DNA of 64,000 bases, taken from IMG/VR virus record IMGVR_UViG_3300022744_000020, positions 186,001 to 250,000 of that record, one strand, 5' to 3'. Both the position numbers and the translations under genes were made by a program. The stretch's first letter is position 1; every line of letters begins with the position of its first letter. Positions 49,190-55,144 of the stretch are shown piece by piece. The notes beneath the pieces are model-generated. The model worked only from the letters and a program-made list of their open reading frames with translations. It had not been told where the DNA came from and did no database searches.

Positions 49190-49975
49190 ATGATTTCCTT
49201 GCAACTCGCTTCAAAGAAAGAAGCTTTTGATTTCTTCCCTGGCTTTGAAGACATCTGGCCCTCCAAATGGAGCGAGCAAGCCATGGTCGCTACAACCGAC
49301 TGGACTCTTGATGAAGCCGATGGAGAGATTTTCTACATTCTTAACGACGGCAAGAAGATTGGAATTACTGGCTGGTGGCCGTTATCCGAATCAATGGCCG
49401 GGCTTCGCTGGCATGGCGTCATCCCTGAATGCCGAGGTCATGGATTTGGAAAGCAAGCGCTTATTTACCTTACCAATCGTCTTGCTTCAAACTACAAAAA
49501 ATTGATCGAAGTCACCATGAGTGATGCACCGATCAAGTTCTTTCGTTCTTTCGGATTCGAAGAAATTACGGACCCGATCTTGATTGAATTTACCAAGAAA
49601 TTGGTAGGGGATTACGGACATCGTTTTTTGGAATTTCGATTGGAGGAGAAGCGGATCTCGTACAAAGACTACGACTATCCGTGGGATTGTGTCAGCGTGT
49701 TTAAGCTGACCACAGAACATTGGGGCCCCTCTTATCGGCTGGATCAATACTGGCGTGGGTTGGGTCCTGGCCAGAATCTTTTTGTGGAAGTTTCATATTT
49801 CAAACTAGGAACTGAGAATAACGACCACAAGGTTTTGGTTCGTGGTGGGGACGCCGGTGGAATGGAGCGTACGTTCCCAGGACGGGCGGCAGCAAAAGAG
49901 TTCTTTGATAAAATTGTGGAGTTGCCAAGGGTTAACGGAGCAGAACTCAAAGCCCTAGGCTTCACCTACATTTAA
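49190..49975 (+). CDS. GNAT acetyltransferase fused to an unknown C-terminal domain
   Basis: WHGVIPECRGHGFGK motif A; FFRSFGF motif B. Confidence 0.8.
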   Translation: MISLQLASKKEAFDFFPGFEDIWPSKWSEQAMVATTDWTLDEADGEIFYILNDGKKIGITGWWPLSESMAGLRWHGVIPECRGHGFGKQALIYLTNRLASNYKKLIEVTMSDAPIKFFRSFGFEEITDPILIEFTKKLVGDYGHRFLEFRLEEKRISYKDYDYPWDCVSVFKLTTEHWGPSYRLDQYWRGLGPGQNLFVEVSYFKLGTENNDHKVLVRGGDAGGMERTFPGRAAAKEFFDKIVELPRVNGAELKALGFTYI

Positions 49976-51805: not shown

Positions 51806-51850
51806 ATACTGCCCCTTCCTCAAAAAGGAAGGGGCAGTATGCTTTTCTTT
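51806..51850 (+). terminator. Long terminator hairpin, CAAAA loop
   Basis: ATACTGCCCCTTCCT-CAAAA-AGGAAGGGGCAGTAT plus T-rich tail. Confidence 0.85.
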
Positions 51851-51904
51851 TTCTTTTATTCTCTGCCGGCAAGTAAATTCTCAAACTTAACCAGGAGTGC
51901 ATCC

Positions 51905-52495
51905 ATGCAACCCCTTAAGCAATTGATTTTATTGCTGTGTTTTCTGTTCAGCACCAATGCGTTCAGTCACACACCGCAGTGGATAACTCACCAAACTAAA
52001 GGCCGAGTAAGTCAATCTCTGGCTGTAAAAATTGTCTCTTTTGTGCATGCCTACTCACTCAAGCGGGATCTAGATCCTGACTTGGTGTTTCGGTTCATCA
52101 CGGTGGAGTCAGGGTTTCGATACAATGCATTATCCAAAGCCAACGCTCGTGGATATATGCAAGTAGTACCACAGTACCACCCTGAAAAAATAAGAGGTCG
52201 CAACCTCTTTGATCTCGAAACCAACATTGAAGTTGGGACGGCAGTGTTTCAAGAATATCTACTCAAGTATGGTGACGTTGATAAAGCCATTCGCGCTTAT
52301 CAAGGAAATCATCGCAGTGATGTCTACTTGAACAAAATTCGAGCAGTCAAGTTTATTGACTATCCGAATTACTACCCCAACACATCCCTCATTCCTGTCG
52401 AGTCGAATGCTGTAGATTTTAATGAACCTACATCATCAATTTGCGACGAGTTAGATCACTACGCTTGCATGCCTGACGAATTGCGTCGGCCATAA
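51905..52495 (+). CDS. Secreted SLT-domain lytic transglycosylase
   Basis: Signal peptide; ITVESGF (catalytic Glu), ARGYMQV, AIRAYQG. Confidence 0.88.
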   Translation: MQPLKQLILLLCFLFSTNAFSHTPQWITHQTKGRVSQSLAVKIVSFVHAYSLKRDLDPDLVFRFITVESGFRYNALSKANARGYMQVVPQYHPEKIRGRNLFDLETNIEVGTAVFQEYLLKYGDVDKAIRAYQGNHRSDVYLNKIRAVKFIDYPNYYPNTSLIPVESNAVDFNEPTSSICDELDHYACMPDELRRP

Positions 52496-52563: not shown

Positions 52564-53103
52564 GTGATCAAATCACTCAAATGGGTCTTGATGACCCTGA
52601 TTTTAAGTCTTTCGATTCCCTGCTTCCCGATGTCGGTGCAGTGGATTCAGTATGCGTCGTCAAACCGCATCGATCCCATCCGGGCAGTTTACCTCAAAGA
52701 CATGATTGCCAGGATCGCCAAAGAGAAAGGCGTGCCGGTAAAGCTGGCGCATCAACTGATCTCTACCGAATCTGCATACATTGCCCGAGCCAAGCACGGC
52801 CCAGCAGTAGGAATGACCCAGGTCATTCCTAGGTTCCATCAAGATCGATTCTTGACTGGAAACTATTACAACGAGGAAAACAACGTCCGAGCCGGGTTGG
52901 ATTATTTGGCAGAGTGTTTGGAAGATGCTCACGGTAATCAGGCGGTCGCTCTGGCTCTGTACAACCGAGGACCGCATCGATACGCATACGCCAGCAAAGT
53001 CCTTCGGGTGAACTTCAAGATACCAGCTTCATTCCATCGCTCTCAAGCAAAGAAACAATTGTATGCGAGCCGCGACGTGAGTCGACCACGGAGCAAGGGA
53101 TAA
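52564..53103 (+). CDS. Second secreted SLT-domain lytic transglycosylase
   Basis: Signal peptide; ISTESAY, AVGMTQV, ALALYNRG. Confidence 0.85.
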   Translation: MIKSLKWVLMTLILSLSIPCFPMSVQWIQYASSNRIDPIRAVYLKDMIARIAKEKGVPVKLAHQLISTESAYIARAKHGPAVGMTQVIPRFHQDRFLTGNYYNEENNVRAGLDYLAECLEDAHGNQAVALALYNRGPHRYAYASKVLRVNFKIPASFHRSQAKKQLYASRDVSRPRSKG

Positions 53104-53473: not shown

Positions 53474-53698
53474 ATGGAAAGATTCGAGGTATGGATTTCA
53501 ACATTCTGGGGAATGGGGCAGATCCAGCGTTCTCGACGGGTGTACGTCTGTCAGGCTAAGACTTTTGACGAGGCGTGCTCAAAATTTGTCGAAAGATACC
53601 CCGAGTACCGAGAAGGTTGGAAGCCAGAGTCGCGACAAATTGGCTGGGATCAAAAGCTTTTCCCTTCCAAGAAAGAAGCAGACGCGTACTTGAGATAA
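53474..53698 (+). CDS. Small hypothetical protein (74 aa)
   Basis: GGAGG RBS before MERFEVW. Confidence 0.7.
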   Translation: MERFEVWISTFWGMGQIQRSRRVYVCQAKTFDEACSKFVERYPEYREGWKPESRQIGWDQKLFPSKKEADAYLR

Positions 53699-53708
53699 GG
53701 GATTTTCA

Positions 53709-53796
53709 GGGTCCTGTCCCAACACCGGCCTTCTAAGCCGGCGACATAAAACGGTTGGACGGAAGTCAAGAAGTTCGATTCTTCCAGGACCCCCCA
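53709..53796 (+). tRNA. Atypical tRNA-like RNA, Arg(UCU) anticodon arm, no D arm
   Basis: GGGTCCTG/CAGGACCC acceptor, CCGGC-CTTCTAA-GCCGG, GAAG-TTCGATT-CTTC T arm, 3' C-CCA. Confidence 0.7.
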
Positions 53797-53805
53797 AGTC
53801 ACCTG

Positions 53806-53862
53806 TCATACATTCACTCCAGAGTCCAAAAGACTCTGGAGTGAATGTATGATGCTTTTTTT
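53806..53862 (+). terminator. Long terminator hairpin, CAAAA loop
   Basis: 21-bp perfect stem TCATACATTCACTCCAGAGTC/GACTCTGGAGTGAATGTATGA plus T run. Confidence 0.88.
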
Positions 53863-53907
53863 ATGCCGATCTAAAATAGGGTACAACCTCCTTGGAGAAA
53901 TAGAAGC

Positions 53908-54375
53908 ATGCCTGATAACCACACTCAGCTCTGGACCAGTATTCGCCCCGGTCAAAAATGGCATTTCACTTTGCTGGCGATCGTTCCGAACCATTGGCTA
54001 TCGAAATCGGGCCCGAGCATAAAGGAGAGAATTCAGCAGAATCCAGAATGCCTGAAAGAGATCCAGCGATTCACTGAAGACGGAAAAACTCTCTTTCATG
54101 GCGGTACCATGTTTGAGCTTAAAGCCACACATGGAGTTCCGCTCGATTTTCTGTTGGATAAAATTGTCAACGAGTTTGGCTTTGCTGTCAGTTGGATCGA
54201 TTTCATTGAACAGTCGCGCAAGAATGGGAGATGGGATTTCCAGACCATCAAAGAGATTGATTACGGCCTCAAGGACGCAATGATCGATCGACAGTACGCC
54301 GAAGGAATTCTGATCCGATGTAAGATCTACATGACACAAGTCGCTCACCCGCTTTTGAAGGAACAAACCAAATGA
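53908..54375 (+). CDS. Protein with an alanyl-tRNA-synthetase-like helical motif
   Basis: GGTMFELKATHGVPLDF...EFGFAVSWIDF resembles AlaRS G..AFKLYDTYGFPLD...E.G..VD..GF. Confidence 0.55.
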   Translation: MPDNHTQLWTSIRPGQKWHFTLLAIVPNHWLSKSGPSIKERIQQNPECLKEIQRFTEDGKTLFHGGTMFELKATHGVPLDFLLDKIVNEFGFAVSWIDFIEQSRKNGRWDFQTIKEIDYGLKDAMIDRQYAEGILIRCKIYMTQVAHPLLKEQTK

Positions 54376-54593
54376 AATACAACCAACTCAACATTGGTCC
54401 AGCTTTTTACTATCCAGACGAATTGGAGCGGTTAGAGGTATCTGTGGAAGTATCCCAACCGAACAAGGGAAAAGTTTGGGTCAAGGCTCGCCCTTTAAGT
54501 TGTTCCAATAACGCTTCCTTCCTGCATCGCCTCAAGATGGCTTGGGAAGTTTTTCGTGGTAAATCCGACGTTCTTCGCTGGAGAGGTCAATGA
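54372..54593 (+). CDS. Small hypothetical protein
   Basis: ATGA overlap with the upstream gene. Confidence 0.7.
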   Translation: MKYNQLNIGPAFYYPDELERLEVSVEVSQPNKGKVWVKARPLSCSNNASFLHRLKMAWEVFRGKSDVLRWRGQ

Positions 54594-55144
54594 CTCAACC
54601 GATTCTTTTCGAGCAAATCCCTACGACTTCAATTAAGGACCTAATAAAGTTCTTTGATGAAAATGAACGGGAGTCTCTTAAGTCGATAAGTGCTTTTGAT
54701 TTTGAATCCCAGTTACTTCAGATCTACTGCTTCAAACCTGATGATCCGGTTAATACCTATAGACTTTTCTTTGTTTTAGCTTACTACCGCGAGTTTTGTG
54801 TGAATCCGGCAGAGTGCCGACCATTCGCAAAACTTCCGAACGGGGAAGTTTGTGAGATCGATGTCTCACTACTGGGGATAAGGATTAGGCCAATCACCAC
54901 CACCCTGAAGTACATGGTCGTGGATCGGGACCAACTTAACGTCCCGAGTAGGTATGGATTGCCCGCTATCGCCTTTGATGAAGTCGCCTGGTATCTCGGA
55001 AGTGGTCCTTTTGATGCAGAAGCAAACCCCACGATAGTTGAGCAGGTTCACACAGCTACAAAAGCTCGACTTCAAAAGTTCCCAGAAGAAGATTTCTTCG
55101 GTAAGGCACCTCACCCAAAAGTAAAGAATCGCAAAAAGTCCTGA
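54590..55144 (+). CDS. Hypothetical protein
   Basis: ATGA overlap. Confidence 0.7.
   Translation: MTQPILFEQIPTTSIKDLIKFFDENERESLKSISAFDFESQLLQIYCFKPDDPVNTYRLFFVLAYYREFCVNPAECRPFAKLPNGEVCEIDVSLLGIRIRPITTTLKYMVVDRDQLNVPSRYGLPAIAFDEVAWYLGSGPFDAEANPTIVEQVHTATKARLQKFPEEDFFGKAPHPKVKNRKKS

What the first reader, a model, noticed from the sequence alone, without database searches (positions are those of the whole stretch)
53908..54375. Stand-alone AlaRS-like helical motif protein next to the tRNA-like RNA
Seen in sequence: GGTMFELKATHGVPLDFLLDKIVNEFGFAVSWIDF resembles the AlaRS segment G..AFKLYDTYGFPLD....A.E.G..VD..GF. Established: that segment lies in the helical tRNA-contacting part of AlaRS, not the catalytic core, and no class II synthetase motifs are visible here. 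The gene is the immediate downstream neighbour of the atypical tRNA-like RNA, although a terminator separates them. The RNA has G3:C70, not the Ala G3:U70 identity pair. Inference: a tRNA-binding or tRNA-shielding module that may act with the RNA.
Basis: partly seen in the sequence, partly recalled or inferred. Interest (0 to 1): 0.62.

Follow-up and report, generated by a model that had tools for sequence, protein, structure and literature searches.

The report
Free-standing AlaRS tRNA-recognition fragment in phage
A giant phage carries a small gene derived from the piece of alanyl-tRNA synthetase that touches the tRNA acceptor stem; it belongs to a large, unstudied jumbo-phage protein family, and it is not genetically tied to the odd tRNA-like RNA next to it.

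Summary
ORF 53908-54375 (+, 155 aa) contains the quoted peptide, and the likeness to alanyl-tRNA synthetase (AlaRS) is real homology. AlaRS is the top hit in Pfam, NCBIfam and PDB. 88 of 150 family members hit PF01411 at the same model positions. hhalign against E. coli AlaRS gives 92% probability, E 6.3e-7.

The matching part is the Mid2 subdomain of the AlaRS tRNA-recognition domain (E. coli about 365-435). It includes the LYDTYGFP turn whose Asp400 reads G3 of G3:U70. In the window protein that Asp is Ala73. There is no catalytic core, editing domain or C-Ala, so this is not a synthetase.

The protein belongs to a family of about 226 clusters of 85-150 aa proteins, found almost only in jumbo phages. 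A few GenBank records mislabel members "alanyl-tRNA synthetase".

The proposed partnership with the neighbouring tRNA-like RNA is not supported. That RNA is real, but in 27 other homologue loci nothing similar lies beside the gene, and no neighbouring gene is conserved.

The function is untested. My best guess, at low confidence, is an autonomous binder of the tRNA acceptor stem without G:U specificity. The main rival is a scaffold that no longer binds tRNA.

The parts
53908..54375 (+). Gene for a 155-aa stand-alone AlaRS-Mid2-like protein (stop codon included)
   Evidence: ORF listed. 226 family clusters at E<=1e-3. AF2 model built with the family alignment has mean pLDDT 82.8, about 97 for residues 60-150.
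53894..53897 (+). GGAG Shine-Dalgarno-like motif, 10 nt upstream of the ATG
   Evidence: Read from the sequence.
54046..54243 (+). Segment homologous to AlaRS Mid2 (residues 47-112). The core hhalign match is residues 62-100 (nt 54091-54207). Ala73 (nt 54124-54126) stands where E. coli AlaRS has Asp400.
   Evidence: Asp400 was located in the E. coli alaS translation. Its role is described in PMC6055181.
54208..54357 (+). Family-specific C-terminal part (residues 101-150): FIE.AR.N.WWDFQT motif plus two long helices. It has no counterpart in the AlaRS matches.
   Evidence: Column conservation, secondary structure of the model, and the limits of the AlaRS alignments.
53908..54045 (+). Poorly conserved, low-confidence N-terminal extension (residues 1-46). 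Only the closest relatives share it (VPxxYL motif).
53709..53796 (+). Neighbouring tRNA-like element, not shown to belong functionally. It has an 8-bp acceptor stem GGGUCCUG/CAGGACCC, then C and an encoded CCA. It has no D arm. The anticodon-like loop is CUUCUAA and the T arm is GAAG-UUCGAUU-CUUC.
   Evidence: ARAGORN is negative. The exact 22-mer occurs only in this contig within IMG/VR.
53807..53861 (+). Intrinsic terminator (20-bp stem, T run) between the tRNA-like element and the gene
54372..55144 (+). Two downstream ORFs (73 aa and 184 aa) whose start codons overlap the preceding stop codons (ATGA). They probably form one operon with the gene. They have no homologues in other homologue loci.

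Best explanation
Identity (shown). The gene encodes a free-standing descendant of the Mid2 subdomain of the AlaRS tRNA-recognition domain. It consists of a beta-hairpin, a helix-turn-helix around the conserved (L)K-A/D-T-H-G-x-P-L-D turn, and a short strand and helix. Two phage-specific helices close the domain into a compact unit of about 90 residues. It lacks everything needed for aminoacylation or editing. It belongs to a large family that is essentially confined to jumbo phages of Proteobacteria and sits in variable early/replication-type regions, with no conserved partner gene.

Mechanism (inferred, not shown). The domain acts on its own on something every host supplies. [quoted passage not shown] Because the G3-reading Asp is Ala here, as in half of the family, it would not select G3:U70. 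Such a binder could cover acceptor ends of host or phage tRNAs, or compete with enzymes that inspect them: synthetases, or acceptor-end-directed toxins of the toxSAS or MenT kind.

The adjacent tRNA-like RNA is a coincidental neighbour, not an obligate partner.

My confidence is about 0.85-0.9 for the identity and about 0.3 for acceptor-stem binding. The figure given is a blend.
For: Homology to AlaRS Mid2: 88 of 150 members hit PF01411; 92%, E 6.3e-7.

Local 3D agreement: model 54-~110 against E. coli AlaRS 385-441 and human 400-449, rmsd 2.3-3.6 A, Z 4.3-4.8.

Role of the matched segment: the aligned turn is the one holding E. coli Asp400, which H-bonds the 2-amino group of G3 from the minor groove (PMC6055181).

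Family size and stand-alone architecture.

Jumbo-phage restriction:
- All 23 INPHARED hits are in genomes of 218-349 kb.
- IMG/VR contigs run up to 312 kb.
- Only 4 loci turn up among one genome for each of 185,579 bacterial and archaeal species.

Autonomy: no neighbouring gene is shared across loci.

Gain of positive charge: a conserved Lys replaces AlaRS Tyr398, and the family core is less acidic (median pI 5.6) than the E. coli Mid2 segment (pI 4.5).

Loss of the Asp need not abolish acceptor-stem recognition: a viral mini-AlaRS lacking the conserved Asn and Asp still recognises tRNA-Ala (PMC10036535 abstract).

Enzymes that inspect acceptor ends exist in defence contexts (abstracts listed).
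Against: - No binding data exist for any family member.
- The domain is mildly acidic to neutral (median core charge -2), unlike typical autonomous RNA binders.
- In AlaRS, Mid2 contributes only part of the tRNA interface and works together with Mid1 and the catalytic domain.
- The key Asp varies (A 75, D 43 of 150). It co-varies with position 70 (K/R with D; E/Q with A), as an intrahelical salt bridge would, which suggests a structural rather than RNA-reading role.
- The most conserved family-specific residues (W96, W108, W109, D110, F111, Q112) have no AlaRS counterpart. They could instead form a protein-binding surface.
- Whole-domain fold searches give nothing above generic helical matches (Z <= 5.5 to 6.9).
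Confidence: 0.4

Rival explanations
1. An exapted scaffold. The Mid2-derived fold has lost any tRNA role. It serves as a small protein-protein adaptor or inhibitor aimed at a host or phage protein, using the family-specific aromatic/acidic WWDFQT..DA surface.
For: - The strongest conservation lies in family-specific positions with no AlaRS counterpart.
- The net charge is acidic.
- The D/A change co-varies with position 70 like a structural salt bridge.
- The gene sits among unrelated small early-type ORFs and next to replication or nucleotide-metabolism genes in several lineages: divergent PolB, an HD-domain protein and thymidylate synthase.
Against: No partner is known. The AlaRS-like turn (T-H/Y-G-x-P-L-D), which faces the tRNA in AlaRS, is the second most conserved block. 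That could, however, be purely structural.
Confidence: 0.3
2. One reading: the protein works together with the adjacent tRNA-like RNA, binding, shielding or presenting it.
For: - The two are adjacent: 111 nt separate the RNA's encoded CCA end (53796) from the start codon (53908).
- No sigma-70-like promoter was found between the terminator and the ORF, so read-through co-transcription cannot be excluded.
- The RNA's G3:C pair fits a protein that has lost the Asp specific for G:U.
Against: - A 20-bp-stem terminator separates them.
- None of 27 other homologue loci has a tRNA-like element beside the gene. Only XaC1 has tRNAs, 1.6-3.3 kb away.
- The RNA sequence is unique to this contig.
- JA29 carries the gene with no tRNA annotated in its whole genome.
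Confidence: 0.07
3. A modulator of host AlaRS. A free Mid2 mimic either competes with AlaRS for tRNA-Ala or binds AlaRS itself, changing alanine charging during infection.
For: The domain derives from AlaRS. 29% of members retain Asp, together with the AlaRS-like F-(K/R)-L-x-D context.
Against: - The window protein and half the family lack the Asp.
- The same Asp-to-Ala change (D400A) lowers kcat/Km of E. coli AlaRS 24-fold.
- An isolated subdomain should compete poorly with the full enzyme.
- No evidence of any kind supports a protein-protein contact.
Confidence: 0.08
4. Chance or convergent motif: the similarity to AlaRS is not homology.
For: - Single-sequence scores are below the curated thresholds: 16 bits against a Pfam gathering score of 30.3, and TIGR00344 12.8 against 457.
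- Structural Z scores are within the noise for helical proteins.
Against: - Three independent libraries give the same top family at the same positions.
- Scores improve as the profile deepens: E 0.12, then 0.012, then 6e-4.
- 88 of 150 members hit PF01411.
- hhalign gives E 6.3e-7.
- GenBank annotators reached the same result with InterPro and HHpred for Moabite gp181.
Confidence: 0.03

Closest known systems
AlaRS tRNA-recognition domain, Mid2 subdomain (within Pfam PF01411; InterPro IPR018162, as cited in the Moabite record)
   Same: Homologous sequence over about 40-65 residues, including the G-x-x-x-F-x-L-x-(D)-T-(Y/H)-G-x-P-x-D turn. Same local order of secondary structure. [quoted passage not shown]
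   Different: - It is free-standing at 155 aa, against about 876 aa for AlaRS.
- It has no catalytic, Mid1, editing or C-Ala parts.
- Asp400 is replaced by Ala73 and Tyr398 by Lys72.
- A phage-specific pair of C-terminal helices and the WWDFQT motif are added.
Phage proteins annotated 'alanyl-tRNA synthetase' or 'alanine-tRNA ligase' (Serratia phage Moabite gp181, 132 aa; Serratia phage vB_SmaS-Totoro; Xanthomonas phage XaC1_496, 90 aa) and unnamed homologues (Dickeya JA29 gp045, Erwinia PhiEaH1, Klebsiella FBKp24)
   Same: The same family: 32-52% identity to the window protein over the core. The BFVD models superpose, with JA13 at rmsd 0.5 A over 83 columns.
   Different: The window protein has a longer N-terminal extension and is the only member found next to a tRNA-like element. 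The GenBank product names overstate the function, because none of these proteins can be a synthetase.
Free-standing paralogues of aaRS accessory domains: AlaX (the AlaRS editing domain on its own), Trbp111/CsaA (a MetRS-type tRNA-binding domain on its own), and the LysRS KTSC RNA-binding domain proteins noted in jumbo phages (PMC7824862). AlaX and Trbp111/CsaA are cited from general knowledge, not from a tool result.
   Same: The concept is the same: a single non-catalytic aaRS domain released as an independent small protein. The KTSC case shows that jumbo phages do pick up such pieces.
   Different: It is a different domain and a different fold (helical Mid2 rather than an editing core, OB fold or KTSC). 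No biochemical function is yet shown for it.
Tupanvirus mini-AlaRS (PMC10036535)
   Same: A virus-encoded, truncated AlaRS derivative that lacks the conserved Asn and Asp yet still recognises the acceptor stem.
   Different: The mini-AlaRS keeps the full catalytic and tRNA-recognition domains and charges tRNA. The phage protein keeps only the Mid2-like piece.

Membership tests
Alanyl-tRNA synthetase (class IIc aaRS; PF01411, TIGR00344) | Class II catalytic core (motifs 1-3), giving a full-length match above the curated cut-offs | tested here: not met
   The protein has 155 aa. The Pfam match covers only model positions 374-424 of 552, at 16 bits against a cut-off of 30.3. TIGR00344 scores 12.8 bits against a cut-off of 457.
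Alanyl-tRNA synthetase (class IIc aaRS; PF01411, TIGR00344) | Editing domain (tRNA_SAD) and C-Ala domain | tested here: not met
   The window protein and 150 family members have no recurrent Pfam hit other than PF01411.
AlaRS Mid2 subdomain (tRNA-recognition domain) | Sequence homology to the segment around E. coli residues 365-435 | tested here: met
   hhalign gives 92% probability and E 6.3e-7. The family profile finds AlaRS in PDB at E 6e-4 to 1.5e-3. 88 of 150 members hit PF01411 at the same positions.
AlaRS Mid2 subdomain (tRNA-recognition domain) | The minor-groove Asp that reads the 2-amino group of G3 (E. coli Asp400) | tested here: not met
   Asp400 is the D of LYDTYGFP. It aligns with Ala73 of ELKATHGVP. 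Across the family that column is A in 75, D in 43 and other residues in the remaining 32 of 150.
AlaRS Mid2 subdomain (tRNA-recognition domain) | Three-dimensional superposition on Mid2 of solved AlaRS structures | tested here: inconclusive
   Foldseek ranks AlaRS entries first but at E about 1. VIA-align gives Z 4.3-4.8 over 50-65 residues, rmsd 2.3-4.0 A. That is within the range of generic helical matches.
AlaRS Mid2 subdomain (tRNA-recognition domain) | Contact with the tRNA acceptor stem | not testable with these tools
   No protein-RNA modelling or binding assay is available here.
AlaX (free-standing AlaRS editing domain) | tRNA_SAD fold with the HxxxH / CxxxH zinc motifs | tested here: not met
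   There is no tRNA_SAD hit in Pfam. The predicted fold is helical with two short strands.
Co-functioning protein and tRNA-like RNA gene pair | Conserved adjacency of homologues with a tRNA or tRNA-like element | tested here: not met
   27 other loci (275 kb) were examined. tRNAs occur only in XaC1, 1.6-3.3 kb away. No tRNA-like element lies beside any homologue, and nhmmer finds nothing similar to the window RNA.

The most novel reading that the evidence does not exclude
Jumbo phages have captured the acceptor-stem-reading subdomain of AlaRS and turned it into an autonomous small tRNA-end-binding protein. It would shield host or phage tRNAs from acceptor-end-directed immunity (CCA pyrophosphorylation, 3'-extension or acceptor cleavage) or retune charging during infection. 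That would be a new class of phage counter-defence or translation-takeover factor built from a synthetase fragment.
Probability: 0.15. Interest if true: 0.75.

Novelty: new variant of a known kind. Interest (0 to 1): 0.45.

Why it matters
Free-standing pieces of aminoacyl-tRNA synthetases (AlaX, Trbp111, YbaK and others) have repeatedly turned out to have functions of their own. A stand-alone Mid2 has not been described in the papers I could search.

The family is large (about 226 clusters at 50% identity) and almost exclusive to jumbo phages. It is currently either unannotated or mislabelled as a synthetase. If it binds acceptor stems, it adds a protein-based layer to the phage-host conflict over tRNAs, which so far is known mainly through phage-encoded tRNAs and RNA repair.

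If it does not bind tRNA, it is a clear case of a synthetase subdomain reused for something else. At a minimum, the "alanyl-tRNA synthetase" product names on these 86-132 aa phage proteins should be corrected.

Tried and rejected
- **Word-based protein search** found only 2 homologues. The full HMMER scan was needed to find the family.
- **First AF2 model**, built from 3 sequences, was unusable at pLDDT 51. It was replaced by the 150-sequence model.
- **Ubiquitin hits** with profile A1 are an artefact. They sum about 2.6 bits over each of nine repeats of polyubiquitin. I disregarded them.
- **The PHIKZ123 hit** (E 0.43) did not recur with the profiles.
- **PHROGs** holds no family for this protein, only weak hits to phrog_22967. 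**PADLOC** gave nothing.
- **Megablast of the region against INPHARED** found no match.
- **The search for related loci with the 150-sequence alignment** failed because no block was conserved enough. It worked with the 11-sequence core alignment.
- **Longer family members** (202-313 aa) carry no informative fused domain.
- **Whole-domain fold searches** gave only generic helical matches: designed repeats at Z 6-6.9, others at or below 5.5.
- **Complex prediction** of the Dickeya phage JA29 homologue with full-length E. coli AlaRS returned "no answer", score 0.00. This is no evidence for or against binding.
- **Literature searches** for a described phage AlaRS-like domain, for IPR018162 and for jumbo-phage AlaRS found nothing relevant. 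The Nature 2014 paper on the AlaRS-tRNA complex is not held in the library.
- **A 64-nt stem candidate** upstream of the homologue in L017, L019 and L025 (5365-5428) has no CCA and no anticodon arm. I judged it a chance hit.

Full report
**1. What is there**

The window is part of a 270,383-bp IMG/VR viral contig, IMGVR_UViG_3300022744_000020. From the L007 coordinates, the window corresponds to about 186,001-250,000 of that contig. It encodes a ribonucleotide reductase, a helicase and transglycosylases, and it has no close relative in INPHARED. It is therefore an uncultured jumbo phage.

ORF 53908-54375 (+) encodes 155 aa. A GGAG lies 10 nt upstream of the ATG. The stop codon overlaps the start of a 73-aa ORF, whose stop overlaps the start of a 184-aa ORF.

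Upstream of the gene lie, in order:
- a 74-aa ORF ending at 53698;
- a tRNA-like element at 53709-53796;
- a terminator with a perfect 20-bp stem and a T run at 53807-53861.

**2. Is the AlaRS resemblance real?**

Yes. The single sequence puts AlaRS first in three independent libraries, always over the same segment. Each score is below the curated threshold:
- PDB: Aquifex AlaRS, E 0.12, query 47-112 against chain 361-429.
- Pfam PF01411: E 0.0044, query 53-106 against model 374-424 of 552.
- TIGR00344: E 0.025.

The signal grows as homologues are added:
- A 3-sequence profile gives E 0.012.
- A 150-sequence profile gives AlaRS of Aquifex, E. coli and a third bacterium as the six best PDB sequences, E 6e-4 to 1.5e-3, with human AlaRS further down.
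- Scanned one at a time, 88 of the 150 members hit PF01411 at E<=0.01 (best 7.6e-9). No other Pfam family recurs.
- hhalign of the family against E. coli AlaRS residues 251-481, translated from the MG1655 record, gives 92% probability and E 6.3e-7. Window residues 62-100 align with E. coli 389-426.

The annotators of Serratia phage Moabite reached the same conclusion for its homologue, citing InterPro IPR018162 and HHpred at 88-89%.

**3. Which part of AlaRS**

The aligned turn, E. coli A-F-R-L-Y-D-T-Y-G-F-P-V-D, contains Asp400. According to PMC6055181, Asp400 lies in the Mid2 subdomain of the tRNA-recognition domain. It hydrogen-bonds the 2-amino group of G3 of the G3:U70 identity pair from the minor groove. 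The D400A mutation lowers kcat/Km about 24-fold.

In the window protein the turn reads M-F-E-L-K-A-T-H-G-V-P-L-D. Asp400 is replaced by Ala73 and Tyr398 by Lys72.

Across 150 family members that column is A in 75, D in 43 and T, N or E in 19. Members with Asp tend to have K/R three residues earlier, as AlaRS has Arg396. Members with Ala have E/Q there. This looks like a coupled intrahelical pair. It marks the Asp-type members as the more AlaRS-like form.

**4. Structure**

With the 150-sequence alignment, AlphaFold2 gives a confident model: mean pLDDT 82.8, and about 97 for residues 60-150. It shows a short hairpin, helices at 65-75 and 79-89, a short strand, a helix at 96-105, and two long helices at 110-123 and 128-144. 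Residues 1-25 are disordered.

- Foldseek ranks AlaRS catalytic fragments first, but only at E about 1.
- VIA-align gives Z 4.3-4.8 over 50-65 residues. One example is human AlaRS 400-449 at rmsd 2.3 A and 24% identity.
- An unbiased search of 48,161 representative chains finds nothing above Z 5.5, and those matches are all generic helical arrangements.

The structure therefore agrees locally with the sequence homology but does not prove it independently. The C-terminal half is specific to the family: W96, FIE.AR.N, W108-W109-D110-F111-Q112-T113, and the last two helices. BFVD returns only family members.

**5. The family**

An exhaustive HMMER scan of 1.84 billion representative proteins finds 226 clusters at E<=1e-3 and 120 at E<=1e-10. 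Nearly all are 85-150 aa, and the common core is about 90 residues.

- tblastn against 50,697 phage records finds the family in 23 records, all of 218-349 kb. They are Dickeya JA11/13/29/33, Serratia Moabite/Totoro/Haymo, Erwinia PhiEaH1/Ea277G/pEa_SNUABM_54, Klebsiella FBKp24-like phages and Xanthomonas XaC1.
- IMG/VR loci lie mostly on contigs of 110-312 kb.
- Among one genome for each of 185,579 bacterial and archaeal species only four loci appear. Two are in MAG contigs and two in Pseudomonas draft contigs.

Three GenBank records call the protein alanyl-tRNA synthetase or alanine-tRNA ligase, which is a misnomer. PHROGs has no family for it. I found no paper that discusses it.

**6. Is it linked to the tRNA-like RNA?**

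The RNA itself is real. It has:
- an 8-bp acceptor stem followed by C and an encoded CCA;
- a 5-bp stem with a 7-nt loop CUUCUAA;
- a canonical T arm (UUCGAUU loop);
- no D arm.

Rfam's best match is tRNA-Sec at 27.4 bits, below the gathering score of 47. A simple T-loop/acceptor scan finds it as the only hit in 64 kb, against none in 30 shuffles.

The pairing with the protein is not conserved. I examined 27 other homologue loci (275 kb in all, some of them duplicates of one phage).
- ARAGORN finds tRNAs only in XaC1, 1.6-3.3 kb upstream.
- The structural scan recovers those tRNAs and the window element, but nothing beside any other homologue.
- Rfam at E<=0.1 to 1 finds nothing in eight loci.
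- nhmmer with the window RNA finds nothing.
- The RNA's exact 22-mer occurs only in its own contig in IMG/VR.
- In the two closest homologue contigs an unrelated 76-aa ORF abuts the gene.
- The JA29 record has 318 features for 318 reported ORFs, so no tRNA is annotated in that genome.

No protein-coding neighbour is conserved either. The AlaRS-like gene is the only family shared by all loci. In different lineages it sits next to a divergent family-B DNA polymerase, an HD-domain protein or thymidylate synthase.

One caveat remains. No sigma-70-type promoter was found between the terminator and the ORF, and phage-specific promoters are unknown, so read-through co-transcription in this one phage cannot be excluded.

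**7. How it most likely works**

Shown:
- It is a Mid2-derived, free-standing domain.
- It cannot aminoacylate or edit.
- It has no conserved phage partner gene or RNA.

Inferred: it acts alone on a component that every host supplies. The most economical reading is that it keeps the ancestral activity of its parent domain, docking on the acceptor stem from the minor-groove side, and has lost G:U specificity. It could then cover tRNA acceptor ends or compete with proteins that inspect them.

Points in favour:
- the origin of the domain;
- the conserved turn;
- the gain of Lys72 and a less acidic surface than E. coli Mid2 (pI 5.6 against 4.5);
- the precedent of a viral AlaRS that reads the acceptor stem without the canonical Asn and Asp.

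Points against:
- the domain is still slightly acidic;
- Mid2 is only part of the AlaRS-tRNA interface;
- the Asp/Ala column behaves like a structural pair;
- the best-conserved residues are family-specific aromatics that could equally form a protein-binding surface.

I put acceptor-stem binding at about 0.3. An exapted protein-binding scaffold is also at about 0.3. Modulation of host AlaRS is at about 0.08, co-action with the neighbouring RNA at about 0.07, and non-homology at about 0.03. A complex prediction of the JA29 homologue with E. coli AlaRS gave no verdict.

**8. Comparison and novelty**

The protein works like, and descends from, AlaRS Mid2. It is not a member of the AlaRS enzyme family, because the catalytic, editing and C-Ala features were all tested and are absent.

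Conceptually it joins the free-standing aaRS accessory domains. These include AlaX and Trbp111/CsaA, which I cite from general knowledge, and the LysRS KTSC domain proteins noted in jumbo phages (PMC7824862). The window protein is a new member of an existing but unstudied phage family. The family as a whole is a new variant of a known kind.

Interest is moderate. The homology is solid and the jumbo-phage restriction is striking, but the function is open, and the most eye-catching part of the original idea, the protein-RNA pair, is not supported.

Noticed in passing
window 53709-53796 (+): tRNA-like element with no D arm. It has an 8-bp acceptor stem, an encoded CCA, a canonical T loop and the anticodon-like loop CUUCUAA (UCU). 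It starts 10 nt after the stop of a 74-aa ORF and lies just before a strong terminator, that is, at the 3' end of a transcription unit. ARAGORN misses it. Rfam's best match is tRNA-Sec at 27.4 bits (gathering score 47). It occurs only in this contig in IMG/VR.
   Followed up: partly
window 53807-53861 (+): Unusually long, perfect 20-bp hairpin followed by a T run (intrinsic terminator). No sigma-70-like promoter was detected in the 47 nt between it and the AlaRS-like ORF.
   Followed up: partly
window 51839-52495 and 52564-53103 (+): Two tandem paralogous lytic transglycosylase (SLT-type) genes, each with a hydrophobic N-terminal segment, just upstream of the locus (PHROG transglycosylase hits at E 5.5e-20 and 2.8e-11).
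   Followed up: no
window 49190-49975 (+): GNAT acetyltransferase gene (Pfam E 1.6e-8) about 4 kb upstream. Some GNATs act on aminoacyl-tRNAs, but nothing links this one to the AlaRS-like gene.
   Followed up: no
window 54372-54375 and 54590-54593: ATGA stop/start overlaps couple the AlaRS-like gene to a 73-aa ORF (phrog_21988, E 4.9e-7, unknown function) and then to a 184-aa ORFan. Neither has homologues in the other homologue loci.
   Followed up: partly
family alignment A3, columns of window residues 70 and 73: Coupled substitution. Members with Asp at the AlaRS-Asp400 position have K/R three residues earlier, as in AlaRS (F-R-L-Y-D). Members with Ala have E/Q. The family thus splits into an AlaRS-like 'D type' (43 of 150) and a derived 'A type' (75 of 150).
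   Followed up: partly
L004 3884-4282 (Serratia phage Moabite gp181); L005 4121-4393 (Xanthomonas phage XaC1_496); Serratia phage vB_SmaS-Totoro (H8): GenBank product names 'alanyl-tRNA synthetase' or 'alanine-tRNA ligase' are attached to proteins of about 90-132 aa that contain only the Mid2-like piece. These are annotation misnomers and could propagate.
   Followed up: yes
L014 3550-5682, with the same arrangement in L012, L020 and L024: In one lineage the homologue lies directly downstream of a divergent family-B DNA polymerase (PF20286, E 1e-214). In other lineages it lies near an HD-domain protein or thymidylate synthase. The gene therefore tends to sit in replication and nucleotide-metabolism regions.
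   Followed up: partly
L027 (243-kb contig binned as a betaproteobacterial MAG) and L028 (Gallionella MAG): The closest cellular-database homologues (45-47% identity) sit on MAG contigs that are probably mis-binned jumbo-phage DNA. This hints at a betaproteobacterial host for the window phage.
   Followed up: no
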